A stretch of DNA of 42,974 bases, taken from assembly GCF_000315625.1 (NCBI RefSeq), contig NW_005434432.1, positions 10,216-53,189 of the forward strand, in the 5' to 3' direction. Made by a program: the position numbers and the translations under genes. This DNA is from Guillardia theta CCMP2712 (Eukaryota; Protista; Cryptophyta). The number at the start of each line of letters is the position of its first letter. The stretch's first letter is position 1. The notes beneath the pieces were generated by a model. The model did not search any database. It was not told where the DNA came from and saw nothing but the letters and a program-made list of their open reading frames with translations. Shown piece by piece: positions 4,159-24,267 of the stretch.

Positions 4159-5930
4159 ACAACCGCGCGGGCCGAGGGAGCAGCGGCAGTCCGGCCAATC
4201 GTCTCAGGAGTCTGAGCCTGCTCCTCCGCCGCGACCTACGCTGTCCCTCACCTCTGCGAGCGAGCGCCAAAGACAGTTGGCGATTCATCAGTTCACTGCG
4301 GGTGACCTTCATCGGGCGGTACGGACACTACTGAGCTCCGGCATCTACAGGGCTGAATCTTTCGCTGATCTTCTTGCTGAAGCACAAGAGAAGTTCCCTG
4401 ATGGTGCGTCGCCTGCCTTTGGAAGTGCTTCCGCGGATCATCTCACCCAGCAAGCGCTTGCAGTACTGCAGGTGGATTTGACTGACATCCTCGACACCAC
4501 TAGCCTGATCCAGGCAATCAAGCGCTACAGCTCCTTTGCGGGGACCGATGACCAAGGGTGGAGGATTCGGCAACACCTGTCACCCCTTTCTAGTCATCCT
4601 GCAGCTTTGAAGCTCTACTGCAAACATATCCTCCAAGGGGTCCTTCTTGGCCGGATGCCGGATCTTCTTATTCCTGCCCTGTCAGCCATTCGTCGAGGAG
4701 GCAGATTTATTCCCCTCTCCAAGGGAGCTGATAAACCTGGTCTCCGGCCAATTGTCATCGGTTCTGCACACCGTCGACTCGCGACGAAGCTTGCTTTGGC
4801 AGCGATTCGCTCATTTCTTGACCAGCACTTCCTCTCGTCTCACCCTCGAGCGATTCAGTTCGGACTCGATCGAGACGGCTGTCTGAAGTTCTCGCAAACC
4901 GCGCCAGCGCTCCTGCCCCTTCACGCTCGCGGTGATGATGAGGATGTTGCCAACCCCACAGTGCTGGTGAGTTTGGATGCAAAGAACGCCTTCAACTCCC
5001 TCGACCGCCAGGCTCTCTTCGATGCAATCGAGGGACGTGCGAGTCGCGACTACTTTGATGGGAGCATCACTGAAGGCGCAAGCTTGCCCTCTTGCGAGCA
5101 TCTCCGTTTGTTCGCCTCCTACCTCTCCAGCTACTATGGAGACTCTGCTGACCTTCGACTCTTTCACAAAAGTCAGTCAGCCTCCGTTCAGTGTACCTCG
5201 GGCGTCTGTCAGGGCGATGTCCCCTCCAGCGTATTTTTCTGCCACAGTATCCACCCCCTGCTCCTCCATATCGCAGAGCTTTTTCCCTCTGTTCGAGTCT
5301 TGGCCTATGCTGACAACGTCGTGCTTGTCGGTCCACTCGAGGATGCCGTTGCAGCTACGTCCGCTATGAAGAAGTACATGTTAGCTGATCTGAAGCTAGA
5401 GATTCAACCTCGCGAGTCGAAAGTTTACATCCCCTCCTGGCATCAACACCCTGATCTCTCGCAGCTGAAGAAGAGCCTTAAGCGCCGTCTCAAGACTCAA
5501 CTTCTTCACTTCGAGGTCGTCACTGGCGGGATTACACTTGGCGGCCTGCCTATCGGCACGGATGGATTTCATGCTAGTCAGCTCCGAGCGAAGGTTTCTA
5601 CCCTCAACGAAGAGCTCTCGAAGCTCGGGCTCGTCCAGCATGGCTTCATGTTCAAGACGCTGGTGAGCTCCAGAAGCTTGACCTCTCTGTCCACCTGGCG
5701 CTTGAGAAATACCACCGCTGGCCTTCCTCGCAGTACCTCGCCGCGCATCCCGACCTGCTAGAGTTTGCGAGGTTCAAGCGGGAGCTTCCGCATAGTCGGG
5801 GAGGGGACGAGTTCACGCCCTCTGAGGGTCTACACCCCGCTGTTTACTATACGGCTATCGCTCGCTTCCTCGCTTGGTACTCTGACCAGCCCATGTCCCG
5901 GACGCTGACCTCTCCTCATAGCCTGGACGT
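4159..5930 (+). pseudogene. Reverse transcriptase of the CRE-like element, frameshifted near 5670-5700
   Basis: RT motifs LRPIVIG, QFG, SLDAKNAFNSLDR, GVCQGDVPSS, AYADNVVLVG, LGGLPIG. The downstream frame LLEFARFKRELPHSRGG joins sequence seen in other copies. Confidence 0.9.
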
Positions 5931-6184
5931 TAGGGATTTTATTCCTCCTGCATGCTCCTGCTGCTTGTTGCTTGATTGCTTTGCCCTTAGGCTGCTTGTC
6001 TGCGCGGCTTCGCGCTTGGGCTGGCGCTGCCGCGTCTGGGTGCCAGCAGTGCTGGTTCTTTTCGGGCTTGTGTTTTGTGTGTGATTGTGCAGCTTCTCGC
6101 TGTGGACTGTGTGCCTGCCGGTTCAGCTTGTTCCTGCTTTGTTATGCTTGAGGCACTTTTTACCTTCTGCCAGTAAATCCTATA

Positions 6185-7626
6185 CTTCGTTCATAATGCT
6201 GGAGCGATTGCGATCCTCTACCGTCGTGTGAGGGCTCCTGCACCGGCTGCAGATGGCGCGGCGATCCGGAGGACTTAGGATTTACTGGCACCTGCCCCGG
6301 CTGCTGTGCCTGATGACGCAGGACGCCCCCCGGCATCTGTGGTACACATCCCTGGTTTGCGCGCTCTCGTCGACTCGTCTCGCTGTGGACTGTGTGCCTG
6401 CCGGTTCAGCTTGTTCCTGCTTTGTTTTGCTTGAGGCACTTTTTACCTTCTGCCAGTAAATCCTATATCTACCTCGTCTCATGAGCACTTCATTCCTCCC
6501 CCTGCGCAGCAAAATGTGACTCCTCTTGTCATGCGCGTCTTCCCTCGCCATGTGCATGCTCGCGCTGCGCTGACCGATCAGCAGCGTGATATCCTCACCT
6601 TGCACAGCCGCAGGACACACTCGCTTTGCTTGAGGCACTTTTTACCTTCTGCCAGTAAATCCTATAACCTCGCTCAAGTCGCAGGATAGGGTCTTGCAGT
6701 CTACCATCTTCGCTCATTTTCCTGAGCGTGACCTGAGCCACTCTCCGATGCGAGTCTCGAGCTACTACCCCCTCAAGGCCTATGCTCAGATGCTCGACTG
6801 CTATCTCCATGGCATGCCGATCTGCCAGTGTCCGACGGAATGTGATGGATGTCAGCGCGAGCTCGATCCCTCCGTTGCTGCACATCATCTCCAGACCTGC
6901 AAACGCCGATCCTCCAAGCTTCCCACGGCGCATGACAACCTTACTCGTACGATTCGGTCGATGCTGAACGAAGCTGGTCTTCAGAGCGTCATCGATACAG
7001 TGGGGGATCCTCGTTCTCGACGGCAGGTACCCTCCCATCCTCATGGCCGCAAGATGAAGGGCGATATCCACATCCCTGGAATCCGCGATCGAGGGTCTGA
7101 GCGGTACGAGGGCTTGATGGCGGACGTGACGTTGGTCCACCCTTACATTGGTAGCTCTGCCGACCTGACCAAGTGGGGAGAAGTCAACCTCGACGCCCTC
7201 CATGTTGCAGCGTCTGAGAAGATTCGCAAACATCGCGCTGCATATGCTATGACTACTCCTCCTCGAGCGTTCATCCCTCTTGCCATCTCGACGGACGGTA
7301 CCCTGCATCCTGACACCCTCCGCTTCATCTGGTATCTCGCGGACATCATTGCTCAGCGCTCGATGCCTCTTGAGGATGCGGCGTTTGGTCGGCACTTCGT
7401 GCCTGATGACGGCCCTGCTGCTGAGGTCCTGGCTCGCAAACGCGCCGCCACCTATCAGCGCCTCACTATGCAGCTGACGCTGGAGGCGCTCTTGTCTGGT
7501 GCCAGGCGCATGACGCCCTTGCGGGCGCAAGCACTTCTCGAGCCAGAGGACAGCTCCTCCTCGGACTTTGTCGAGTCGCCCGAGGGGGAGTCTTCACCGG
7601 AGGTCTGCGACTCCGATGGGGGAAGG
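6185..7626 (+). pseudogene. Post-RT, Zn-knuckle and RLE endonuclease part of the element, broken by three short self-insertions
   Basis: ORF 6694-7878 is nearly identical to the C-terminal part of ORF 2132-3703. Inserts at 6268-6288, 6382-6472 and 6626-6668. Confidence 0.85.
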
Positions 7627-10600
7627 CGACCGATGCCGGGGAGGAAGCAGGCGAGCTCGGACCAGCAGCAAGCACCCCAGTGGTGTCGAGCTCTCCGGAG
7701 GCCGGGCACCCGACGTCACAGTGAGGGACGGAGACGCCTCGCCAGCTCCGCGCCGATCGTCGGCGCCACTCTGGATGTTTCCCCCATCGGAGTCGGAGAC
7801 CTCCGGCGAAGACTCCTTCTCGGGCGACTCGATAAAGTCCGAGGAGGAGCTATAGACGGATTTACTGGCAGAAGGTAAAAAGTGCCTCGGGTGCCAGCAG
7901 TGCTGGTTCTTTTCGGGCTTGTGTTTTGTGTGTGATTGTGCAGCTTCTCGCTGTGCGCTGTGTGCCTGGAGGTTTAGCTTGTTCCTGCTTTGTTTTGCTT
8001 GAGGCTTTGTTTTGCGTGAGGCACTTTTTACCTTCTGCCAGTAAATCCATTGTTTCCTCAAGCAACGGAGGGCGTCATGCCGCAAGGGCGTCATGCGCCT
8101 GGCACCAGACAAGAGCGCCTCCAGCGTCAGCTGCATAGTGAGGCGCTGATAGGTGGCGGCGCGTTTGCGAGCCAGGACCTCAGCAGCAGGGCTGTCATCA
8201 GGCACGAAGTGCCGACCAAACGCCGCATCCTCAAGAGGCATCGAGCGCTGAGCAATGATGTCCGCCAGATACCAGATGAAGCGGAGGGTGTCAGGATGCA
8301 GGGTACCGTCCAAGAGGGATGAACGCTCGAGGAGGGAACCATGTCGGATTTACTGGCAGAAGGAGGAGTAGTCATGGCATATGCAGCGCGATGTTTGCGA
8401 ATCTTCTCAGACGCTGCAACATGGAGGGCGTCGAGGTTGAACTCCCCTGCTGCCCTTTCTCCGTCCACGACCGCCCGCTTTGTGGCGGCAGCGGACGTCT
8501 CGACTGACAGTGGTCAGTCGGCTGCCTCCGGGTATCGCGTCTAAGGGATTTTATCCTCCTGCATGCTCCTGCTGCTTGTTGCTTGATTGCCTGACCCTTA
8601 GGCTGCTTGTCTGCGCGGCTTCGCGCTTGGGCTGGCGGTGCCGCGTCTGGTTGCCAGCAGTGCTGGTTCTTTTCGGGCTTGTGTTTTGTGTGTGATTGTG
8701 CAGCTTCTCGCTGTTCGCTGTGTGCCCGGAGGTTTAGCTTGTTCCTGCTTTGTTATGCTTGAGGCACTTTTTACCTTCTGCCAGTAAATCCTATTCCCCA
8801 CTTGGTCAGGTCGGCAGAGCTACCAACGTAAGGGTGGACCAAAGTTGTCACGTCCGCCATCAAGCCCTCGTACTGCTCGGACCCTCGATCGCGGATTCCA
8901 GGGATGTGGATATCGCCCTTCATCTTGCGGCCATGAGGATGGGAGGGTACCTGCCGTCGAGAACGAGGATCCCCGACTGTATCGATGACGCTCTGAAGAC
9001 CAGCTTCGTTCAGCATCGACCGAATCGTACGAGTAAGGGTTGTCATGCGCCGTGGGAAGCTTGGAGGATCGGCGTTTGCAGGTCTGGAGATGATGTGCAG
9101 CAACGGAGGGATCGAGCTCGCGCTGACATCCATCACATTCCGTCGGACAATGGCAGATAGGCATGCCGCAGTGCCATGGAGATAGCAGCCGAGCATCTGA
9201 GCATAGCGGTGCGGGAAGGCCTTGAGGGGGTAGTAGCTCGAGACTCGCATCGGAGAGTGGCTCAGGTCTCGCTCAGGAAAATGAGGAAAGATGGTAGACT
9301 GCAAGACCCTATCCTGCGACTTGAGCCACTGGCAGAGTTGGGTACGGGAAGCTGAGGGAACGGATTTACTGGCAGAAGGTAAAAAGTGCCTCGAAGCAGT
9401 AAGGCGGGAAGGTGCTCAAAGAGCAGAACAAGGGTCTGATAGCTGGACGAGGAAGGATCATCTGCGCGGCTTCGAGCTTGGGCTGGCGAAGCCGGGTCTG
9501 CTGACGGTTGCCAGCAGTGCTGGTTCTTTTCGGGCTTGTGTGTGTTTGTGCAGCTTCTCGCTGGTCGCTGTGTGCAAGCAGGTTTAGCTTGTTCCCAGAG
9601 GGTTAAGGATTTACTGGCAGAAGGTAAAAAGTGCCTCAAGCAAAACAATGCAGGAACAAGCTAAACCTCCTGGCACACAGCGCACAGCGAGAAGCTGCAC
9701 AAACACACACAAAACACAAGCCCGAAAAGAACCAGCACTGCTGGCAACCGTCAGCAGACCCGGCACCGCCAGCCCAAGCGCGAAGCCGCACAGACAAGCT
9801 GCTCAACGAAGCTGGTCTTCAGAGCGTCATCGATACAGTCGGGGATCCTCGTTCTCGACGGCAGGTACCCTCCCATCCTCATGGCCGCAAGATGAAGGGC
9901 GATATCCACATCCCTGGAATCCGCGATCGAGGGTCCGAGCAGTACGAGGGCTTGATGGCGGACGTGACGTTGGAGGGGACGAGTTCACGCCCTCTGAGGG
10001 TCTACACCCCGCTGTTTACTATACGGCTATCGCTCGCTTCCTCGCTTGGTACTCTGACCAGCCGATGTCACGTACGCTGCCCTCTCCTCATAGCCTGGAC
10101 GTTCACTGCTCGAGATCTCTCCGTGCCCAGAAGCATCCTCTGGCGACCTTCTTCGTTGAGGCGCACGACTTCGTTCATAATGCTGGAGCGATCCTCTACC
10201 GTCGTGTGAGGGCTCCTGCACCGGCTGCAGATGGCGCGGCGATCCCACCTGCCCCGGCTGCTATGCCTGATGACGCAGGACGCCCCCCGGCATATGTGGT
10301 ACACATCCCTGGTTTGCGCGCTCTCGTCGACTCGTCTCATGAGCACTTCATTCCTCCGCCTGCGCAGCGAAATGTGACTCCTCTTGTCATGCGCGTCTTC
10401 CCTCGCCATGTGCATGCTCGCGCTGCGCTGACCGATCAGCAGCGTGATATCCTCACCTTGCACAGCCGCAGGACATACTCGCTCAGTGGCTCAGGTCTCT
10501 ATCCTGCGACTTGAGCGAGTACGTCCTTCGGCTGTGCAAGGTAAGAATATCACGCTGCTGATCAGTGAGGGCAGCGCGAGCATGGGACATGGCGAGGAAA

Positions 10601-11765: not shown

Positions 11766-13478
11766 TCAGAAGCATTTGCGTCCCACAATTGCTTTGCCAT
11801 ACGTGTGGTATTCCTTTGCTGAGATCCAAGTTGTTTGCCTTGCATACGACGCGTCATATACAAGAGATGAAAGAAGAGCTTACCCGCAAATCGTGGCCAT
11901 AACTGCAGCACCAAAAAATGCGAGGCAATCGCGCTGTATGACTTAGATCACCTAGAGTACAGAACCAAAGGTCCACACCTCAGGTTTTGCAATGACTCTG
12001 ACCTTCACCGTGCGTGGAGCCAAGGCAACAACCTCTGCCTGCAACCTTTCTTGAAAGCCCTCATGCATTGTAGTTCCTCCAGATAATACGATATTTGCGT
12101 ACAGGTCCTGGAAAGACAAATTTACAAAGCGAAGCTTTCATGACAAGATTTTCTTCACTTTACGGATGTCTAGATCGCTTTTCATGATGCTGCAGGCAGA
12201 AAAGGTCAGGCAGCACAGGAGGGTCCGAGACAGCAACCTGTTGTACACCATCCAGTGGATTCCGACATCCTCCAAACCAAGGAGCGAGGGACGGAAAAGT
12301 GCTTCGAGACATCGAAATCTCTCGCTCCCTATTAGGACAATCTTGGATTGGGATCATTTCAGAGATCAGAGAATACACTCATGGTTTTCCATTCTTACCT
12401 GACCATCTGGCATCTCATAAGATACGTGCAGCTCATCAGACATTGCGGCTTTGTTCAGAGCTTCCTCATAGTCGAGTGCAACAAAGCCTGTTGAAACTGC
12501 TTCAAGGTTACCAAGACTGCCATGCTTGTGTTACAATGTTTTTCTTTCATGTCCCGAACTATCTCATACTCGGCAGATGATTTGAAGCAATAGCCTCTTT
12601 ACGTGGGAGTCAACAAATCTAGAAAGGTCGTGGGCTTCAAACCTTTCTCTCAGAAGTTTTGACAGGTATTCTGTGAGCTCATGACCAGCCAAATTCAAGC
12701 GTTTGATTGCATGCCAGATGGCATAGCCTTGGTAGATCGGAACTGAACATGAAACCCCTTGGCCTGAAATCAAGGTGTAAACATCTGAACTTCAAATCCT
12801 GCGTGAAAGCAAACCTGACTCTACGACAACACCAGTAATCTTTCCAGTAGAATATAAAGACATTACAGCCTGTATTCCGATATAGAAGGCCTAGGTTTCT
12901 CAAATGCTTATAGGTCGAAAAAAGCAACGAGAACTTACTGGGCAATCGAACCCTTCAAAGAATCTCTCACAAACTTCCTCTCTTTTGGCTTTCGGGTTTA
13001 GCGGAGCTTCTGTCAACAGTACAGGGTGATGTTTGAGGGATACTCCAAGCCCTGTCATTAGTACAAATCAAGAAATTCGATACCTAAAACGTACATCTCG
13101 TTGTTAAGTACCGGTAATTACAGAACTCCAAACTTTCTCCATGCCATTCCAGTCCGAAATTACTCCTATTCCCGAGTTTGATATGAAAAATTCTCGTTAA
13201 ACATAGTTTAGGCTGCTTACCATGCTTAATGGGATAACTCAATTTCAGAATCGCTCTGTGAGCCAGGGCATCATTGCCCACGTAACATTGCTGCGATTCT
13301 GAAAAAGAAAAAAATTTCTTGTGCTTGACTTCGCCGACGACATTTGGACAAATGAATCGCGGTCGCTGTGAAAATACACATCTGACTCACCATGACATAA
13401 ACGAATATGAGAATAAGAACCTCGTCAGAAGCAAACCCTGCTTTAATTCTTCCACTTCCATTATCGATGATGACAGGT
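11766..13478 (-). CDS. Divergent actin / actin-related protein, multi-exon
   Basis: Spliced translation includes [139 protein letters not shown] and GRKCF*. Introns are about 50-60 nt GT-AG. Confidence 0.95.
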
Positions 13479-13535
13479 CTGAACCACATGTAACACGTCC
13501 AACAACAATGAAAAATAAGTGATCTCAAAGCATAC

Positions 13536-16500
13536 ATGACTTGAAATGGGTCCACAGACACACAATCCACGGGATCTGATGACAAGACATAAGTCATATC
13601 CTCAGTACAACACCTTCATGATACCAACCTCCTTCAGCTGCCTCAACAGCATTCGCATCAACGATTCTCTCAGCATTGCCAGACGACTCGTGCATGCTCT
13701 TATTCTGCATCCTGATACAGGCTTCGTCGTGAATGAGTGTATGCTCGGCCATTGTGACCTCCTCTTCCTGCATCATAGAGAGTTGATCTTGCTCAACAGA
13801 CGCACTCCGCTTATCAGCCTGGGGCCCGTGTCCCTGAGGATCCGCTGCGTAGATTCGTTCACGGCCTCCTTGAGCTTCCGTTGATCTCAGCACAGGCACG
13901 ATCTTATGCTCAGGCCCATTGCCCTTTCCTGCCCGAGCCCCTGCCTCTGCATCAGGCTTGACCTCCTCGTCTGACGGTCTGAGGCTGACTGCTGGGTGCC
14001 AAGACGTCGCTTCTCCCCAATCGTTATGCGCAGTCTCAGCCTCAGTCTTTGCTCCAGCCCCGCCCCAAGTCAAAGCCTCGGCGTCGTCTCCAGCCTGAGC
14101 CTCAGCAGGATCACAAGGCACAGCATCACTGTATGACGTCCTCGAGTCGTCACATTCATCTACGGCTTGAAGTGCTGCCTGCGCTACCCTCCTGTCTGGC
14201 TTCAAGGCTGGTGATTGAAACCCCTGTTGCTCTTCCTGCTTGGCTCCCTTTTTCTGACGGCGTATCCGGGCTCCTATGTCAGTAAGAAATGCAACCTTGT
14301 GCAAAGACCCGGCTTCCGCCGTATCTGCTACCTCAGCTCCAGCCTCTTCTTCAGTTCCAGTTCTACCCACACTCTGTGCTCCAGTCTTAGCCTTATCCGT
14401 CTTTCCTTTCCCTGGGTCAGAAAGAGCTTGAGACCCAGCCTCTCCTTTATTATTTGCATTGATCAATGAAAGGCAGCGAAGCTGAGCTCCCACAATTTTT
14501 CTTTGATTCAATCCAAGATCCCGGAGCTTCTGTCCGCCCTCCCTAGTGCCAGCCACATCTCCAGCCCCATCTCGAATTTTATCCTGTGGTCGAGCTCCAG
14601 CGCCAGCTTCAGCGCCAGCTCCAGCTCCAGCCTCATGCAATACCTTGGCTTCCGCCTTATCTGCAAGTCCAGTCCCAGCCCCAGCCCCAGCCACTGTATC
14701 AGCCTGAGCCCAAGCGTCATCTGTATCTTCCACCTCAGCGCCAGAAGCTTCATATCCAGCATCCACTACAGCCTCAGCCCCACCATCAGTCTCATCCACA
14801 TCTGATACGTCAGTCACATTGCCAGTCCCATTCCTAGACCTGACCAAAGCTTTGGTCGTAACGGCTCCAGCCTTGCCCATACACATCTGACTCACCATGA
14901 CATAAACGAATATGAGAATAAGAACCTCGTCAGAAGCAAACCCTGCTTCAATTCTTCCCCTTCCATTATCGATGATGAAATCAGATCGATCAGCATCTGC
15001 AACCTCGGACCGTGCCGACGACCGAGGCTTTGAGAGTGCCTGGGCTTGACGAAGGGTCTGCAGCTCTCCTTCCAGCTCCTTAGAGCTTGCTTCCAGCTCG
15101 TTGCGCTCCTGCTGCGTGTGTGCCTGGGCTTGACGAAGGGTCTGCAGCTCTCCTTCCAGCTCCTTAGAGCTTGCTTCCAGCTCGTTGCGCTCCTGCTGCG
15201 TGTGTGCCTGGGCTTGACGAAGGGTCTGCAGCTCTCCTTCCAGCTCCTTAGAGCTTGCTTCCAGCTCGTTGCGCTCCTGCTGCGTGTGTGCCTGGGCTTG
15301 ACGAAGGGTCTGCAGCTCTCCTTCCAGCTCCTTAGAGCTTGCTTCCAGCTCGTTGCGCTCCTGCTGCGTGTGTGCCTGGGCTTGACGAAGGGTCTGCAGC
15401 TCTCCTTCCAGCTCCTTAGAGCTTGCTTCCAGCTCGTTGCGCTCCTGCTGCGTGTGTGCCTGGGCTTGACGAAGGGTCTGCAGCTCTCCTTCCAGCTCCT
15501 TAGAGCTTGCTTCCAGCTCGTTGCGCTCCTGCTGCGTGTGTGCCTGGGCTTGACGAAGGGTCTGCAGCTCTCCTTCCAGCTCCTTAGAGCTTGCTTCCAG
15601 CTCGTTGCGCTCCTGCTGCGTGTGTGCCTGGGCTTGACGAAGGGTCTGCAGCTCTCCTTCCAGCTCCTTAGAGCTTGCTTCCAGCTCGTTGCGCTCCTGC
15701 TGCGTGTGTGCCTGGGCTTGACGAAGGGTCTGCAGCTCTCCTTCCAGCTCCTTAGAGCTTGCTTCCAGCTCGTTGCGCTCCTGCTGCGTGTGTGCCTGGG
15801 CTTGACGAAGGGTCTGCAGCTCTCCTTCCAGCTCCTTAGAGCTTGCTTCCAGCTCGTTGCGCTCCTGCTGCGTGTGTGCCTGGGCTTGACGAAGGGTCTG
15901 CAGCTCTCCTTCCAGCTCCTTAGAGCTTGCTTCCAGCTCGTTGCGCTCCTGCTGCGTGTGTGCCTGGGCTTGACGAAGGGTCTGCAGCTCTCCTTCCAGC
16001 TCCTTAGAGCTTGCTTCCAGCTTCGTTGCGCTCCTGCTGCGTGTGTGCCTTGGGCTTGACGAAAGGGTCTGCAGCTCTCCTTCCAGCTCCTTAGAGCTTG
16101 CTTCCAGCTCGTTGCGCTCTGCTGCGTGTGTGCCTGGGCTTGACGAAGGGTCTGCAGCTCTCCTTCCAGCTCCTTAGAGCTTGCTTCCAGCTCGTTGCGC
16201 TCTGCTGCGTGTGTGCCTGGGCTTGACGAAGGGTCTGCAGCTCTCCTTCCAGCTCCTTAGAGCTTGCTTCCAGCTCGTTGCGCTCTGCTGCGTGTGTGCC
16301 TGGGCTTGACGAAGGGTCTGCAGCTCTCCTTCCAGCTCCTTAGAGCTTGCTTCCAGCTCGTTGCGCTCCTGCTGCGTGTGTGCCTGGGCTTGACGAAGGG
16401 TCTGCAGCTCTCCTTCCAGCTCCTTAGAGCTTGCTTCCAGCTCGTTGCGCTCCTGCTGCGTGTGTGCCTGGGCTTGACGAAGGGTCTGCAGCTCTCCTTC

Positions 16501-18220
16501 CAGCTCCTTAGAGCTTGCTTCCAGCTCGTTGCGCTCCTGCTGCGTGTGTGCCTGGGCTTGACGAAGGGTCTGCAGCTCTCCTTCCAGCTCCTTAGAGCTT
16601 GCTTCCAGCTCGTTGCGCTCCTGCTGCGTGTGTGCCTGGGCTTGACGAAGGGTCTGCAGCTCTCCTTCCAGCTCCTTAGAGCTTGCTTCCAGCTCGTTGC
16701 GCTCCTGCTGCGTGTGTGCCTGGGCTTGACGAAGGGTCTGCAGCTCTCCTTCCAGCTCCTTAGAGCTTGCTTCCAGCTCGTTGCGCTCCTGCTGCGTGTG
16801 TGCCTGGGCTTGACGAAGGGTCTGCAGCTCTCCTTCCAGCTCCTTAGAGCTTGCTTCCAGCTCGTTGCGCTCCTGCTGCGTGTGTGCCTGGGCTTGACGA
16901 AGGGTCTGCAGCTCTCCTTCCAGCTCCTTAGAGCTTGCTTCCAGCTCGTTGCGCTCCTGCTGCGTGTGTGCCTGGGCTTGACGAAGGGTCTGCAGCTCTC
17001 CTTCCAGCTCCTTAGAGCTTGCTTCCAGCTCGTTGCGCTCCTGCTGCGTGTGTGCCTGGGCTTGACGAAGGGTCTGCAGCTCTCCTTCCAGCTCCTTAGA
17101 GCTTGCTTCCAGCTCGTTGCGCTCCTGCTGCGTGTGTGCCTGGGCTTGACGAAGGGTCTGCAGCTCTTCTTCCAGCTCCTTAGAGCTTGCTTCCAGCTCG
17201 TTGCGCTCCTGCTGCATGTGTGCCTGGGCTTGACGAAGGGTCTGCAGCTCTCCTTCCAGCTCCTTAGAGCTTGCTTCCAGCTCGTTGCGCTCCTGCTGCG
17301 TGTGTGCCTGGGCTTGACGAAGGGTCTGCAGCTCTCCTTCCAGCTCCTTAGAGCTTGCTTCCAGCTCGTTGCGCTCCTGCTGCGTGTGTGCCTGGGCTTG
17401 ACGAAGGGTCTGCAGCTCTCCTTCCAGCTCCTTAGAGCTTGCTTCCAGCTCGTTGCGCTCCTGCTGCGTGTGTGCCTGGGCTTGACGAAGGGTCTGCAGC
17501 TCTCCTTCCAGCTCCTTAGAGCTTGCTTCCAGCTCGTTGCGCTCCTGCTGCGTGTGTGCCTGGGCTTGACGAAGGGTCTGCAGCTCTCCTTCCAGCTCCT
17601 TAGAGCTTGCTTCCAGCTCGTTGCGCTCCTGCTGCGTGTGTGCCTGGGCTTGACGAAGGGTCTGCAGCTCTCCTTCCAGCTCCTTAGAGCTTGCTTCCAG
17701 CTCGTTGCGCTCCTGCTGCGTGTGTGCCTGGGCTTGACGAAGGGTCTGCAGCTCTCCTTCCAGCTCCTTAGAGCTTGCTTCCAGCTCGTTGCGCTCCTGC
17801 TGCATGTGTGCCTGGGCTTGACGAAGGGTCTGCAGCTCTCCTTCCAGCTCCTTAGAGCTTGCTTCCAGCTCGTTGCGCTCCTGCTGCGTGTGTGCTGGAC
17901 TGACGAAGGGTCTGCAGCTCTTCTTCCAGCTCCTTAGAGCTTGCTTCCAGCTCGTTGCGCTCCTGCTGCGTGTGTGCCTGGGCTTGACGAAGGGTCTGCA
18001 GCTCTCCTTCCAGCTCCTTAGAGCTTGCTTCCAGCTCGTTGCGCTGTTGACGAAGGGTCTGCAGCTTTTTCATCTTTTTGTTCAATTTGAGTATTTTCAG
18101 CTGTATTATCTCAATCTCATCAATTTTATTTGAATCCTGTTCTATCCAGATAAGTTCCATGGTTATTTCGAGCATTGTGTTCAGGAAGGTATTGATTCCT
18201 GCAATCTCCATCTCACACAT
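13536..18220 (-). CDS. Long N-terminal extension (28-aa coiled-coil repeats plus Ala/Glu/Gly-rich linker), probably spliced to the actin domain
   Basis: The frame is open from the repeat array through ALSKPRSS...IIDNGRGRIEAGFASDE and ORF 13594-14898. Introns 13576-13628 and 13479-13535 join it in phase to actin. Indels at 16021-16290 and near 17895 break the frame as assembled. Confidence 0.65.
14879..14978 (-). repeat. 100-bp duplicate of 13374-13473 (first actin exon plus most of the following intron)
   Basis: Identical except for two substitutions, AGT>AGG and AAA>GAA. Confidence 0.95.
15036..18066 (-). repeat. 84-bp tandem array, about 36 near-identical units, encoding QQERNELEASSKELEGELQTLRQAQAHT
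   Basis: Directly visible period of 84 bp; heptad pattern of Leu. Confidence 0.97.
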
Positions 18221-19023
18221 CTTTCTTTTTGTTGTGTTGACAACGAGATCACGAGATGAGTCTGTTTGTTGCCTCCAATTCTTTGTTCGTTCCCACCACG
18301 ATGTTTTGAGCTCACCTGTCGAACTAACTTTTATGAGGCTCTTATGAGTATTTCAAATTACAGAGAAACAAATCAAACTTTTGTTTTAATTCCTTTAAAC
18401 AGTTTTACGCCCGCGGCCGGTCAAAAATCAGTGCCGTAGGACAATCAGGAGAGACTCCGACCGCGAGGAGGCTTGACCCTGACACTGTCGCACAGGCCAA
18501 ACGTCGAGAAGAGAAAAGACAGCGAGAACCAAACCCAATCCTGCCGACTGCTGTCCCCCAAACTTAACCGTCGATACCTTCACCTAAGGCTGCGCGCGGG
18601 ACAATCCCGCCGCCGGCCCCGCGCCATCACGGCATGTGCCGCTGAGCGATGTCGCTGCGGCCGCCGCCGAAGGAATGAGACGCATACCGGACCGCACCTG
18701 CGATGATCGCACCGACTGCCAGTGACATGAACTGGCTTCGCCGGAACTTTCACGCCCCGGGCCCGCGGCCGCCGCGCCGCGGCCCGGCCCGCGGCCCGAG
18801 TCCCGGCAGCCCTGAGGCCGCTCCGAGGGTCAAGTTTGAAACAACCCGCCTCAGCAGATGTTATGTACCCAGGAGGGCAATGGTGGGAGGGAAGTGAAAT
18901 GAAGGAATGGAGCATGGGTTGAGAAGCCGTCAATGCTAACTTGATGTCAGATGTTCCAGGTTCAAGACAATGAAGACAATGATTTGATGTCGGATCTTGC
19001 TTAATCGAGCTCAACTATAACAA

Positions 19024-19883
19024 ATGAATTCGAATTTTGTCACGGAGATTCTATGCAGCGTCTCATTTCTTGTTTACTTGACTGCTGCAGCATCTTGCAG
19101 CTTTGAGCAATCTCATCGAGTCAGTCATCGAAGAGCGGCTATCAGTCAGTCTGAGCATGGAGGAGGCATCAGGCTGAGAGGAGGAGAGGATGGGAAGTCG
19201 GAGACGATTGTGGTGCCGACAGACTGCAAAGGAGTCGCAGAAGCCGTGAAGGTCTGCTTGTCTGCAGGTATCTCCTCATCTCATGGTATCGGCGTAGTTG
19301 GCATGTGGGCAGCTCAAGAGATACGTCACCATGCCCTCGGAGATGGAGCGAGAAGCAGGCAAGATTCTCGACCCGGACATCAACAACGTGCGTTCGCTAT
19401 TGATGGGGTTGGAGCTGAGCTTGTTGGCAGTACGGCGAAGCCGTCCTCCCCGAGACTTACGAGTGGACCCCAGCGAGTGGGCAGAAGATCCGCGTGAAAT
19501 GCGGAGAGTACGAGTGGGGGGGATGGTCGGACAGGAAGCAGTGCTTCAAAGACCCTCAGGAACTCATGCTCGTCTTCACCTCCGACCCTGACGCATCGTA
19601 GGCGTTGATCATTCGATCCCACCTGGACTTCCGTGGCGAAGATGGAGTGTGTTGTATGTGGTCAGCTCTGCTGGTTGAGGCGTTGAGGCTGATGCAGGTG
19701 ACGGAGAATGGTTGATGGCCCTGGGCTCTTCGGGCATCTTCAAAGACGTCATGCTGCTTTCTACTCATGTATCGGAGAGGAAGAGGGGTGTCGATAGTTG
19801 TATGTGAGAGGAGGAGGAGTTGACGTATGTATGTGAGAGGAGGAAGAAGAGGGGGAGGAGGAGGAGGAAGAGGAGGAGGAGGG

Positions 19884-19925
<42 letters not shown>

Positions 19926-20992
19926 GGAGGAGGAGGAGGTGGAGGAGGAGGTTTTGGTGGTGATGTCGTTGGCAGCACATGCCGGGAGTGGGGGGAGGAC
20001 TGACGCTCAACATTGGGGACGGTGACTGGAGGATCGAGAATTGTCAGCTGAAGTTTGACCCTGTTGCTACTTTGAGAATGTGAGAGTGATTTGTGCGTTA
20101 GAGTATTTCCTGGGCCCTTGACGGGAGTGCTGGCGGCTAGCGGAAATGTGAGGAAGAGGGGGAGGGAGGAGAGGTGCTCACGGACCTCAGTCAAGAGTCA
20201 GTCTGCTTGATTGCATCTTGTTACCTGTCGAGCTTACAAACATCGGCACTCATGGGTGAGTCGCTTTGAGCGCTGGTCGAGGCTGAAGGTGTCAGGTATG
20301 GAATGTTCGCTTGGGGTCAGAGCGTTGTGAAGTTTGTCGGGTGCGAGGTCCAAGACTTTCAGGTTTTGTAGACATAGAGAGACGTGAGCCGATCTGTGTG
20401 CCGTCAGGTGGGAGCTGACGTCTCATTCAACGCCTCCGTTGTTTTCGAAAGGTCTTGTTGCTCGTCCTGTTGCTTTCTCACCCCCAGCAGCTGTGACGTG
20501 TCTCACAACCGCTTCGCCATCTACCTCCATGACGAGGCTCACGTCAGCATGTCCAACTGCACATTGACGCAGAACCACAAGGTGCGAGAAGGTTGTGAGT
20601 TGTGAGCTCACGCGTGTCGTTCAGAGCGCTTTTTGTGTGGGTCACCATGGCAAAGATCGAGCATCGCTAGCGCTCAGAAATGTCTCGCTGCTGGTGAGCA
20701 AGAGGGTGATCAGCATGCGAGGATGACAAGCTCGGGCAGGGCAACAAGCTGTGGAGTGACGATGACCGACCGAAGACGCTCGTCGAGGAGAATGTTGTGA
20801 TTGACCTGGAGAACTTCTCTTTGCCTGTCGTCTACCGGGTGAGAAGCTGGATGGAGAAGCGAGGGGTCTTTGTCATTCCCAGCTGATTCACTTCCCCAGG
20901 ACACCAACTTCACCATCGCTCATGTGGATCAAACGTTCGATGAAGAGAGCGAAGCCGAACGAGCATTCCTACACGAGTACATGACCAAGTGA
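19024..20992 (+). CDS. Signal-peptide protein with probable right-handed beta-helix (pectin lyase-like) repeats, multi-exon
   Basis: Hydrophobic N-terminus, then IRLRGG, TIVVPTD, GDWRIENCQL and CDVSHNRFAIYLHDEAHVSMSNCTLTQNH. Last exon ends ...FLHEYMTK*. Confidence 0.6.
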
Positions 20993-21149
20993 GATTTTTA
21001 ATCCCGCCTCCGGCTTGACTTGCTCTCAGCATTACGATGAACATCACCTCCTTGCATCCCTTGCAGGAGCCGATAAATTGGACTCTAGCGTATCCCTTCG
21101 ATGATTTGGGACGCAGAATTCGTTTGAATCTGACGAGTAAATCAAGTGG

Positions 21150-24100
21150 ATGAATCAAAGTCGTACCTCTAGTCTTGACACTGTTAAGCCCAGCCGCGGT
21201 TCTCGTTATCTTCGCCTCTCACTACCATCGGACGAGTCCGCCTCAGAAAGTGACCACAAGGACGGACTCGTAACGTATACTGTAACGGCGATCAATCATT
21301 GTATCTGGGGCGGACTTGGGTCTTTTTTCCCCCAGCTGCTCTCGAACAGCGATGGAGATGAAGATGAAGATGAAGATGAAGATGACGATGGTGGTGGTGA
21401 TGATGATGACGACAACTACGATGCCAGCAAGACTTTCCTCCTCCTCCTCTTCATCTCTTTTAGAAGATCCCACCCGATCTTTTCTTCAGCCCCCGTCAAC
21501 TTCCGCTGCAAATTGTCTCTATGACCCTGGGCATCAAGGTTCTGACTCCCATCACTTGGCTGTCTCAGCTGCTGCATGTCCCTGCCCGTCATCGTCTGAC
21601 ATCTCAGCATCTTTCAAGCTCTCCTCAGACACTGCAGAGGTTGGCTGGAACACCAATAAGGAGGCCTCAGTCGGTGACCGGGTGCTGATCGCAATCAACT
21701 TTGAGGGTCGAGGACGAGATGATGTGTACATGCTGCAGCTGCAGCTACGACGAGCTCTTGACGTCCTAGTCATGAAAGAGTACCTGACGTCTCCAGAGAC
21801 GTTCTCATCGCACGCCAGATGCTTGTCCTTCACCTACGAGCATGCGCTGCCTGGTGCGCACCTGGTGAGCGTCATGCTGTTCTCCTCTGACAAGAGCGAA
21901 TCGAAACCAGAGCTACTCTTCTCCTCTCATCATAACTTTCAAGTCAAGACAGATGCTCGTGTATCGCCGCCGCATAATCTCAGCACTGGCTCACCAGCCT
22001 CTCTTTTGCTCAATACCGTCAAACTAAACGGGCAAGAGGTCGAGATCCCCTTGTATCTTTGCGGTGTTCTGCGAGGAACATGCCTGGTCTTGGTTGCTGT
22101 GACAGAGACAGAGACTCTTGAAGTGTCCAACAAAGTTCTGCTGCTTGACCTGGACTGCAAACAAGGTCCCTTCAATGTTTCACTTGCTATTCCCTCGGGG
22201 AAGGAATATTCTCTGTTCGTTGCTCTTACAGAGCTCAAGGACGACTTGCCTGCAAGCCTCAAACCAGCTCTACAACTTCGAAAGTTTTTCAACTTTAACA
22301 GGTGCGTCATGAACGAGTGCTCCCTTGCCGACCACATGTCACCACCCTCTTCCGAACTTCATACTCCGGCTCTTCCTCCTACCCCAGCCGCCAACTCGGT
22401 GGCCCCTCACCCGGAGGACCTCTTGTGCTCTATACACCTTTCATTTTTCCCAGGCGAGACAGTACACGCGCTAGAAACTTTCACTGTGCAAGTCAACATG
22501 GCTGGCTTGGCCAAAGGAAGCAGATACAAGATCGTTTTGTTCATAACTCTCAAGGAGACCGGGCTGGTGATGTTCGAGAAGACCGAGGTCTTCCATGGCG
22601 ATGCATTGCAGTTCATCAAGCATGACATCTCCTCCTTCTGGCCTGGAGAGTTCGTAGTGCATGCAATGCTGTTTGACGATCACTCACAAATCGAAGGTGA
22701 GGACACGATTTTGGCGAAGCTGACGAGGAAAATAGTGTCTGTTGCCTCCTGTCAGGTTTCTTACCTGTGGTCTTCCTCTGGTAGTCCTCTCTTCAACGGC
22801 TCCTTGCCCTACAAGGATGCTCCTTTCTCTGCCCCCGCTGCAAGCTCAACATCGCTTTCCGATAAGGAGCTGCCTGTCACTCTCGTGACTGTCGCTACGG
22901 TGGATCGCGCGGTCGTGCTGGTCAATGTAGCAGCTCACTGGAAGGAGGACATGGCGGTTGCCTTCTACGCGCGATCTCAGTCAGACGAGCAGCAGATCAG
23001 GCGCTTCGTGAGAGACTCACTCGGCCCGTGGTTCTCTTCTCGCGGCAGGCAACTGGAGATCGTAATGCTCACTCTTTGTCCTGATGCTGACGCGGAAGCT
23101 CGTTTCGCTGTCTTTCCGATCAACATGCTCCGAAAGATTTCATGTGCCATAGCAAAGAGCGACCTCGTCTTGTACAGCGACGTTGACATGATCCCGTCAG
23201 ACTCCCTTGCGCATCAGATTCGACTTCTCTATCAAACTTCGACTGTCACGTCCCAGCAGCTGCTGGTCGTGCCATCCTTCAAGAGCAATGGTGCCTGGCC
23301 TCCTTACGCGCATGTCGAGCTGCACAACAAGTCGCTGCTCGTGAGGACTCATGCCGTCACCTTCCTTGACCTCGTCACGAGCTTCGACGCCTGTCAGGTC
23401 AACATTCCTGCAATGCCTTGCGGCCTCTGGTCGCCCTCCCACCGGTGGACAGAAGCTGGAGTCTACCATGCTCCGACCGAGTACAGCAGGTGGTTCAACA
23501 CCAGCGTCGCGTACGAGGTCGACTACATCACAGGCTACGAGCCTTATGTGGTCGTCAACCGCAGCTCGTGGATGGGCAGGCATGGGGCTGGAATGTATGA
23601 TGACGGCTACATCAGTTGGGGCTGGGACAAGTCCTCCCTTACTCTGGAGGCTGCGCTGCTCGGCTACTCCTTCCTCGTCCTTCCCATGGGTTTCCTCGTG
23701 CACGCCTCCTCTCAGATCAAGCAGAGACAACTCAACGTCCGCCTCTTCGCCATGGGGCAACAAATGTATCCGGGCTGGGGCCCACCAGACACTCGAGGAA
23801 GGCAGCGGTTCCATGCGATGCTGTTCTCCAATCAAGTTGACCCGCAGCCCAACGTCGCTATCCGCTCCTACCTCGTGCCAGCCTTCAAGGCCGACGGCTG
23901 CAGCATGGCAGGGCTGCGCTTGGTGCCAGCTGACCGCGTGGAGGTGTCAAAAGAAGGGCACGTGCTGCGAGTCACAGCTCAAGGGCTGTGCGAGGGCGTC
24001 GGGTATCAAATCTATGTGAGCGTGCTGCAAGCGAGCGATCGGATGCCCTTGCATAAGCTCTTCTCTCAACACACTCTCCTCCCGCGTCAGTTTGCGGGCA

Positions 24101-24267
24101 GCAGCCATGAGACCCAGCTGAAGCTCGGTAGGCTCCCAGCGGGAAAGGTCGTGCTAAAGCTCGAGCTTCAAGACCTGCAGGCTTCCAAAGTGCTCGAGAG
24201 AAGCGGGCGAGCAACAATCGACTGGACGGAAAGGAAGTATGAGATAGGCAAACTCGACGCCTCCTGA
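21150..24267 (+). CDS. Glycosyltransferase family 49 (LARGE/B4GAT1-like) domain protein; start uncertain
   Basis: 983-aa ORF with FPINMLRK, SDVDMIPS (DxD), LVVPSF, YEPYVVV, WGWDKSS and YSFLVLPMGFLVH. Confidence 0.85.

What the first reader, a model, noticed from the sequence alone, without database searches (positions are those of the whole stretch)
11766..18220. Giant coiled-coil-actin fusion protein
Seen: GT-AG introns 13576-13628 (phase 1) and 13479-13535 (phase 2), the same size class as the other introns, join the upstream ORF to actin as ...[29 protein letters not shown].... Predicted protein is about 1900 aa: ~1000 aa of 28-residue (4-heptad) coiled coil, a ~450-aa acidic linker, then a complete divergent actin. 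Known: a 28-residue periodicity typifies myosin rods, and actin fusions are rare (POTE-actin, filactin). Inference: a tethered or dimerised actin acting as a long spacer, nucleator or cytoskeletal fibre component.
Basis: partly seen in the sequence, partly recalled or inferred. Interest (0 to 1): 0.75.

Follow-up and report, generated by a model that had tools for sequence, protein, structure and literature searches.

The report
Candidate coiled-coil–linker–actin fusion gene
In the alga Guillardia theta, a fast-evolving actin copy has lost its own start codon and most likely reads on from a long acidic segment and a young 36-copy coiled-coil repeat. That would be a rare natural actin fusion, but no RNA or protein evidence supports it yet and the repeat is not one open frame as assembled.

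Summary
- an 84-bp x 36 tandem array encoding a 28-residue heptad unit;
- a 416-codon acidic open frame continuing from the array;
- a complete divergent actin (13 GT-AG introns of 45-60 nt; 53.5% identical to conventional actin).

The two proposed introns exist, keep the frame, score like real introns and form the best of 168 in-frame paths.

New points in favour of fusion:
- The closest paralog shares all 12 internal intron positions and has its own ATG. Here that ATG is lost and the former 5' leader is read as protein.
- The upstream frame ends with no intergenic space.
- A 100-nt copy of actin exon 1 plus the start of its intron lies between array and linker, read in frame.

Against:
- There are no transcripts and no relatives.
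- Public annotation holds only a 122-residue product, ended by the first frame break.
- Seven homopolymer-length indels break the array.
- ATG 13597 offers an independent start.

Verdict: probable linker-actin fusion (about 0.5). The whole ~1,900-residue protein is less certain. Function is unknown; the myosin-rod analogy is not supported. The scan noted this same stretch twice, not on other DNA.

The parts
18046..18220 (-). Start codon (ATG 18220) and unique, AT-rich, heptad-like N-terminal ~58 residues
   Evidence: ORF list and sequence. The exact product of 18220-17855 (122 aa) is a public G. theta protein, P0006, from NCBI, UniRef and EukProt. The neighbour gene GUITHDRAFT_121643 starts at 19024 on the + strand, so the two genes lie head to head with an 803-nt spacer.
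15036..18045 (-). 84-nt tandem array of 36 units, each encoding 28 residues of heptad coiled coil (net charge -3 per unit)
   Evidence: TRF and unit-by-unit comparison. 27 units are identical. There are 4 substitutions, all nonsynonymous. The array is unique in the genome. Heptad period is 3.5. Coiled-coil Pfam hits. No credible intron lies inside a unit.
17869..17950 (-). 82-nt unit (two 1-nt run-length deletions plus one substitution) that ends the frame from ATG 18220 at stop 17852-17854
16021..16356 (-). Four adjacent odd units of 83, 83, 83 and 87 nt, summing to exactly 4 x 84. The shifted stretch holds one stop, TAA at 16174-16176.
   Evidence: The frame before this stretch equals the frame after it.
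14979..15035 (-). Unique 19-codon junction between the array and the exon-1 duplicate
14879..14978 (-). Derived 100-nt copy of actin exon 1 (last 54 nt) plus the first 46 nt of intron 1. The array's frame reads it in the actin frame.
   Evidence: 98% identity, and both differences are nonsynonymous (S to R in DNGSG, K to E). tblastn to actin residues 7-24 gives E = 4e-4.
13629..14878 (-). Linker: Ala/Gly/Glu/Asp-rich open frame (414 residues scored: D+E 73, K+R 45), an orphan
   Evidence: Stop counts and codon score. Shuffle test. Composition. Unique in the genome. No Pfam family. No relative in 1.84 billion representatives. Atlas blank.
13576..13628 (-). Candidate intron 1 (53 nt, phase 1, GT..AG). 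It contains the stop of the upstream frame (13594-13596) and the alternative ATG (13595-13597).
   Evidence: PWM sum is 11.1, against a leave-one-out median of 9.4 for 25 real introns.
13536..13575 (-). 40-nt mini-exon, derived from the ancestral actin 5' leader and the start of its first intron
   Evidence: Alignment with the C169 paralog and spliced alignment.
13479..13535 (-). Intron 2 (57 nt, phase 2). It is stop-free, so the frame is kept even if it is retained.
   Evidence: The paralog has an intron ending at the same place.
11766..13478 (-). Divergent actin: 13 exons and 12 internal introns, with the stop at 11766-11768. Introns: 13420-13366, 13220-13166, 13111-13052, 12938-12891, 12814-12764, 12642-12597, 12534-12488, 12398-12342, 12237-12190, 12158-12108, 11978-11934, 11883-11839.
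   Evidence: PF00022 at 138.8 bits on the genomic stretch. Exons score individually. Spliced alignment. Identities are 53.5% to conventional actin and 61.8% to the C169 paralog.
13374..13473 (-). Ancestral copy of the 100-nt duplicated segment (exon 1 plus 46 nt of intron 1)
   Evidence: It is taken as ancestral because the flanking leader and intron are homologous to those of the C169 paralog.

Best explanation
One young, lineage-specific gene of Guillardia theta runs from ATG 18220 to the stop at 11766 on the minus strand. It is a fast-evolving duplicate of the intron-rich actin on contig C169.

This copy lost its own start codon and gained an N-terminal extension. A first exon carries a short unique head, a recently expanded 28-residue coiled-coil array, a vestigial copy of actin exon 1 and an acidic, probably disordered, linker of about 415 residues. 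That exon is spliced through two ordinary small introns (13628-13576 and 13535-13479) onto the actin fold.

The seven frame-breaking indels in the array are most likely homopolymer-length errors of the assembly.

Inferred, not shown:
- The rod dimerises and holds two actin-like heads at the end of flexible tethers.
- Because the actin N-terminus lies on the filament surface, the heads could join or cap conventional filaments.
- The catalytic changes D154E, D157Q and H161C suggest nucleotide binding with altered hydrolysis.
For: Shown:
- The linker frame is open far beyond chance. It ends 11 codons after a donor whose intron scores above the median of 25 real introns. Introns that good occur about 6 times in 6.8 kb of long ORFs, and not at all in the linker or the array.
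- The C169 paralog shares all 12 internal intron positions and phases. It begins at its own ATG, 7 nt before its first intron and about 625 nt after the upstream ORF.
- In this gene that ATG is absent. The homologous leader (the 12-nt GATCCCGTGGAT match at the same distance from exon 1) is read as protein.
- The upstream stop overlaps ATG 13597, leaving no room for a promoter or a 3' UTR.
- The array's frame runs without splicing into a copy of actin exon 1, read in the actin frame, and on into the linker.
- The frames before and after the odd units coincide.
- All 7 array indels are run-length changes. The conventional actin on C194 carries two CCCC-to-CCC frameshifts, which shows such errors occur in this assembly.
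- The public annotation starts a model at ATG 18220.
- The actin has diverged more than 45% yet keeps every splice site and has no stop, so it is under selection as a protein.
Against: - I could reach no transcript, peptide or ortholog.
- No public protein contains the linker, not even a G. theta gene model. The only public model is the 122-residue product ended by the first frame break.
- ATG 13597 is in frame and would give an independent actin with a 20-residue leader.
- A phase-compatible GT within the 45-60 nt size class of the acceptor would arise by chance roughly 3 times in 10.
- The acceptor's pyrimidine tract is inherited from the old leader, so part of its score reflects ancestry.
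- Three consecutive units carry the same 1-nt deletion, which could be a real variant that was amplified.
- The language-model recognition score of the linker is low.
- The array and the duplicate are so young that the open frame cannot be credited to long purifying selection.
Confidence: 0.5

Rival explanations
1. Two units. The actin is translated on its own from ATG 13597, with a 20-residue leader and the 57-nt intron spliced or retained in frame. The upstream head, array and linker form a separate orphan gene ending at 13594, or a recently disabled one.
For: - ATG 13597 is in frame with the mini-exon and exon 1.
- The upstream frame has its own stop.
- As assembled, the array is frame-broken.
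- Public annotation stops at 17852 and includes no linker.
- There is no expression evidence for the upstream part.
Against: - The stop and the ATG overlap (ATGA), so the actin promoter and leader would have to lie inside the upstream coding frame. The paralog has about 625 nt of spacer.
- The pyrimidine-rich leader of the paralog is not kept beyond about 30 nt upstream.
- The ancestral ATG was lost rather than kept.
- A good, size-typical intron sits exactly at the end of the frame.
Confidence: 0.28
2. Alternative first exons. The duplicated exon-1 copy at 14978-14925 donates its intact donor site and splices across a 1,560-nt intron to exon 2 (acceptor 13366), fusing the coiled coil directly to actin. 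The linker is then intronic, or belongs to a second isoform.
For: - The copy keeps the exon end, the donor and 46 intronic nt identical to the working site; donor score 6.1.
- The exon-2 acceptor is strong, at 9.3.
- The product would be a complete actin fold with no repeated segment.
Against: - It leaves the 416-codon open linker frame unexplained.
- All 25 introns in the two paralogs are 45-95 nt, and the neighbour gene's exon matches leave gaps of similar size.
- The copy carries S to R in the phosphate loop DNGSG and K to E, both nonsynonymous. That argues against actin-type constraint.
Confidence: 0.07
3. The upstream part is not a gene. It is a GC-rich minisatellite that happens to be open in several frames, plus a misassembled or non-coding spacer. 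Only the actin is real.
For: - The unit is also open on the + strand, giving ORFs of 337 and 557 codons.
- Codon score does not separate the sense frame from its antisense frame in the array.
- The array length exceeds a Sanger read, so copy number and indels are uncertain.
- There are no relatives anywhere.
Against: - The sense frame gives a clean heptad pattern with Leu at d positions, while the antisense gives Leu/Cys-rich nonsense.
- The linker frame is significant on its own.
- The array is single-locus, not a dispersed satellite.
- The duplicate copies differ at two sites, so they are not an assembly collapse.
Confidence: 0.12

Closest known systems
Filactin (Dictyostelium discoideum Fia)
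   Same: An actin domain at the C-terminus of a long N-terminal extension in one polypeptide. [quoted passage not shown]
   Different: Filactin's actin domain is close to conventional actin; this one is only 53.5% identical, with changed catalytic residues. From my own knowledge, filactin's extension holds filamin-type Ig repeats. Here the extension is a tandem coiled coil plus an orphan acidic segment with no Pfam domain.
POTE-actin (primates) and ubiquitin-actin (chlorarachniophytes); own knowledge, not checked here
   Same: Natural chimeric genes in which an actin copy sits at the C-terminus of another module. They arose by recent gene rearrangement.
   Different: The partner modules differ (ankyrin/POTE; ubiquitin, which is cleaved off). 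Neither is a coiled-coil rod.
Intron-rich actin paralog of the same genome (G000 contig C169, 93.5-95.3 kb)
   Same: All 12 internal intron positions and phases are shared. It has the same GSGRIKAGF motif and 61.8% identity. It is the only locus that matches at DNA level.
   Different: The paralog is 75.1% identical to conventional actin. It keeps DAGDGV and H161, and its own ATG behind a ~625-nt spacer. It has no coiled coil or linker upstream.
Myosin II rod 28-residue repeat
   Same: It has a 28-residue (four-heptad) period.
   Different: Here the period is only the length of a near-identical DNA repeat, with no alternating charge zones evolved over time. Pfam Myosin_tail scores 28 bits against a cut-off of 38.1. 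There is no motor domain.
Exon-intron cassette coiled-coil arrays elsewhere in G. theta (earlier scan note s1-446814)
   Same: These are tandem DNA arrays that lengthen a helical stalk in the same genome.
   Different: Those units need splicing. Here the 84-nt unit is a multiple of three and open, and every GT..AG pair inside it scores negative.

Membership tests
Actin family (Pfam PF00022) | Profile match above the curated cut-off over the whole fold | tested here: met
   138.8 bits (cut-off 27) on the genomic stretch despite introns. Three single exons each pass the cut-off. Spliced alignment covers conventional actin residues 1-374.
Actin family (Pfam PF00022) | Nucleotide-binding motifs: phosphate loop 1 (DNGSG), Q137, SGGTT, K213/E214 | tested here: met
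   All are present in the alignment columns.
Conventional actin | Phosphate loop 2 (DSGDGV) and catalytic H161 intact; identity to conventional actin in the range of true isoforms | tested here: not met
   The loop reads ESGQGV and H161 is Cys. K336-W340 and the D-loop are rewritten. Identity is 53.5%.
Conserved ARP classes (Arp1-Arp11) | Orthology to one ARP class in a phylogeny | not tested
   No reference ARPs could be brought in: the joined model may not be searched, and the exons are too short for the length window. The shared 12/12 intron positions and the DNA match to the C169 actin argue for a recent actin duplicate rather than an ancient ARP.
Coiled coil | Heptad hydrophobic periodicity with apolar a/d positions, few helix breakers | tested here: met
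   The period peaks at 3.5. The d positions are L, L, L, T and the a positions R, S, L, Q. There are 0 Pro and 1 Gly per 28 residues. Several coiled-coil Pfam families pass their cut-offs, for example DUF7801 at 70 bits and ERM_helical at 59 bits. The weak a positions leave the oligomer state open.
Myosin tail (PF01576) | Profile match above the cut-off | tested here: not met
   28 bits against a cut-off of 38.1.
Single fused transcription unit | Spliced RNA or peptide across 13629|13575 | not testable with these tools
   No transcript collection for this alga was reachable. The protein collections hold no product containing the linker.
Single fused transcription unit | One uninterrupted reading frame from ATG 18220 after splicing | tested here: not met
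   As assembled there are stops at 17852 and 16174, caused by 7 indels. These may be assembly errors but that is unproven. The frame is uninterrupted from 16173 onward.

The most novel reading that the evidence does not exclude
A natural coiled-coil-actin fusion of about 1,900 residues. A roughly 150-nm acidic dimeric rod would carry, on flexible tethers, two divergent actin heads that can enter or cap conventional filaments, acting as a built-in cross-linker, anchor or nucleation seed. It would have been created recently by a rearrangement that used a 100-nt templated copy of actin exon 1 as the junction.
Probability: 0.3. Interest if true: 0.75.

Novelty: new variant of a known kind. Interest (0 to 1): 0.5.

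Why it matters
Actin is almost never found as part of a larger polypeptide, and each natural exception has been informative about what the fold tolerates. If this gene is expressed as read, two things follow:
- It is a rare snapshot of a gene fusion in progress. The ancestral start codon is lost, the 5' leader has become exon, a filler duplicate sits at the junction, and a repeat array is still expanding.
- It gives cell biologists a natural actin tethered in pairs to a long rod.

It also shows that the public annotation of this locus (a 122-residue fragment) is probably truncated by assembly errors.

Tried and rejected
**Searches for relatives (all blank)**
- Word search with the linker and the coiled-coil part.
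- Full HMMER search of the linker against 1.84 billion representatives.
- ESM Atlas.
- Two metagenome scans, with the linker tail and with actin exon 2.
- Rfam on the window.

**Look-ups**
- The genome paper (doi 10.1038/nature11681) is not held, so the sequencing chemistry is unconfirmed.

**Readings rejected**
- Dispersed satellite or transposon origin of the array or linker: both are single-locus.
- Exon-intron cassette reading of the array.
- Coiled coil upstream of the paralog.
- Linker as a decayed actin copy: only chance-level tblastn matches, E > 1.
- A short in-frame intern intron after the exon-1 copy (54 nt, 14925-14872): possible, but the acceptor score is -2.8.

- No joined spliced protein was handed to any search, fold or look-up tool. 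Exons were searched by reference only.
- As a result the actin part was not classified against ARPs. The annotated actin model and any Hanusia phi ortholog were not retrieved.
- Splice-aware protein-to-DNA alignments were run only inside local scripts.

The contig is not human.
Full report
**Where and what**

The window is G000 contig C242:10216-53189 of an 87.1-Mb, 669-contig eukaryotic assembly. The large ORF at 21316-24264 is 100% identical to GUITHDRAFT_121643 of Guillardia theta CCMP2712, on a 53,189-nt contig. This confirms the organism named in earlier scan notes. That neighbour gene starts at 19024 on the + strand. The finding lies on the minus strand, head to head with it.

**Observation**

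TRF reports an 84-nt array at 15036-18045 with 35.9 copies and 99% matches.
- Cut at a fixed anchor, it has 36 units, 27 of them identical.
- There are four substitutions, all nonsynonymous.
- There are seven indels, confined to five units: one of 82 nt at 17950, three of 83 nt at 16356, 16273 and 16190, and one of 87 nt at 16107.
- The sense frame gives a 28-residue unit. Its strongest hydrophobic period is 3.5, with Leu at three of four d positions, no Pro and net charge -3.
- Pfam returns only generic coiled-coil families; Myosin_tail is below its cut-off.
- The + strand is also open but reads Leu/Cys-rich nonsense.
- The array occurs nowhere else in the genome.
- No GT..AG pair inside a unit resembles an intron. 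The exon-intron cassette reading that another note gave for a different G. theta array therefore does not apply here.

Downstream, the same frame stays open from 16173 to the stop at 13594.
- The last 416 codons (the linker) have no stop. The other sense frames have 12 and 43, and the antisense frames 6 to 14.
- This frame has the best codon score of the six.
- None of 5000 dinucleotide-preserving shuffles gives an open run longer than 254 codons.
- The linker is Ala/Gly/Glu/Asp-rich and acidic, and is unique in the genome apart from short GCN-type repeats.
- It has no Pfam family. It has no relative among 1.84 billion cluster representatives, and does not even find a public copy of itself. 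The Atlas gives no look-alike.

**The actin**

I wrote a splice-aware protein-to-DNA alignment and used the conventional actin of contig C194 as guide. It recovers a full-length actin fold ending at stop 11766-11768, with 13 GT-AG introns of 45-60 nt.
- Identity is 53.5% to conventional actin and 61.8% to the paralog on C169. That paralog is itself 75.1% identical to conventional actin.
- The C169 gene has introns at the same 12 internal positions and phases. It is the only other locus matched at DNA level.
- This is therefore a fast-evolving recent actin duplicate, not evidently an ancient ARP.
- DNGSG, Q137, K213/E214, SGGTT and the C-terminal KCF are kept. The second phosphate loop reads ESGQGV, H161 is Cys, and the D-loop and residues 336-344 are rewritten.
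- So much divergence without a single stop or lost splice site implies selection for a protein.

**The junction**

I built a position weight matrix from the 25 introns of the two paralogs.
- Intron 13628-13576 scores 11.1 and intron 13535-13479 scores 11.4. The leave-one-out median of real introns is 9.4.
- Pseudo-introns that good and 45-60 nt long occur six times in 6.8 kb of long ORFs. None occurs in the linker or the array.
- Taken alone this is moderate evidence. Given the acceptor, a phase-compatible GT in the right size window would arise by chance roughly three times in ten. The acceptor's pyrimidine tract is also inherited.

**New evidence from the paralog**

C169 starts at its own ATG, 7 nt before its first intron and about 625 nt after the previous ORF.
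- Its leader motif reappears in our gene at the same distance from exon 1, but without the ATG that follows it in the paralog.
- The donor has moved 40 nt downstream, so the old leader and the start of the old intron are now read as protein.
- Upstream of that, the paralog's pyrimidine-rich leader is replaced by the purine-rich linker frame.
- The next in-frame ATG (13597) overlaps the stop of the upstream frame (ATGA). This leaves no room for a promoter or a 3' UTR if the two were separate genes.

**The duplicate**

A 100-nt direct repeat of 98% identity lies at 14879-14978 and 13374-13473. It consists of the last 54 nt of actin exon 1 plus the first 46 nt of intron 1.
- The downstream copy is ancestral, because its flanks are homologous to the paralog's.
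- The upstream copy sits exactly between the array and the linker. The array's frame reads it in the actin frame and runs on into the linker.
- Its two differences are both nonsynonymous, one of them in DNGSG, so it is not constrained as an actin segment.
- Because 100 is not a multiple of three, it cannot be a simple insertion into an older array-linker frame.
- My guess, untested, is templated filler at the rearrangement that created the fusion.
- Its intact donor also allows a rival reading in which it splices over 1,560 nt to exon 2. That reading leaves the linker frame unexplained and needs an intron far outside the local size class.

**The frame breaks**

As assembled, the frame from ATG 18220 stops at 17852, and a second stop lies at 16174.
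- All seven indels are single-base run-length changes.
- The four adjacent odd units sum to exactly 4 x 84 nt, so the frame before equals the frame after.
- The conventional actin on C194, otherwise perfectly conserved, carries two frameshifts, both CCCC to CCC. Homopolymer errors therefore exist in this assembly.
- I think assembly error is the likelier cause, but the same deletion in three consecutive units could be a real, amplified variant.
- The public annotation holds exactly the 122-residue product of 18220-17855. The annotators' pipeline therefore chose the same start and was stopped by the first break.

**What could not be done**

No transcript data were reachable.
- Look-ups of gene context are withheld for this genome.
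- Metagenome scans found nothing.
- The actin part was therefore not placed among ARPs. The annotated actin model and any Hanusia phi ortholog were not retrieved. Hanusia phi is in the protein collection.

**Verdict**

- A linker-actin fusion is the best reading, at about 0.5.
- The full coiled-coil-linker-actin protein additionally needs the array indels to be errors, at about 0.3-0.4.
- The main rival is an independent actin starting at ATG 13597, with an orphan or dying gene upstream.

The near-identity of the repeat units and of the duplicate marks the whole extension as evolutionarily very young. The myosin-rod comparison is not supported. Any role as cross-linker, anchor or nucleator is inference from the position of the actin N-terminus on the filament surface (established knowledge) and from the dimer-forming tendency of heptad repeats.

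Noticed in passing
L002 (G000:C194:1-3320), minus strand about 700-1820: The conventional actin of this assembly is split over three frames by two single-base deletions, both CCCC to CCC, in an otherwise perfectly conserved sequence. These are most likely homopolymer errors of the assembly on a small contig.
   Followed up: partly
L027 (G000:C169:84000-93999) 5777-8850 and L004 1-781: Upstream of the paralogous actin lie long ORFs of 278 and 728 residues, the second with an SH3-like stretch. They look like a separate gene ending about 625 nt before the actin ATG. I did not analyse them.
   Followed up: no
L027 4553-5152: A 23-nt tandem repeat with 26 copies and 98% matches, next to GC-rich simple repeats.
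   Followed up: no
window 18316-18378, minus strand: A 63-nt GT..AG pair with a good splice score (12.3) lies just upstream of ATG 18220. It may be a 5' UTR intron of the coiled-coil gene.
   Followed up: no
window 19024-24264, plus strand: GUITHDRAFT_121643 is a beta-helix plus glycosyltransferase-49 protein of 1,349 residues. It has a 63%-identical Hanusia phi relative and two G. theta paralogs. tblastn of the public protein shows several low-identity stretches (54-77%) at 19428-20702, which suggests the public exon model is imperfect there.
   Followed up: no
window 15046-17937, plus strand: The antisense strand of the array is open for 337 and 557 codons, reading Leu/Cys-rich. This is a by-product of the repeat that gene finders could mistake for a gene. 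Neither product is in the public collection.
   Followed up: yes
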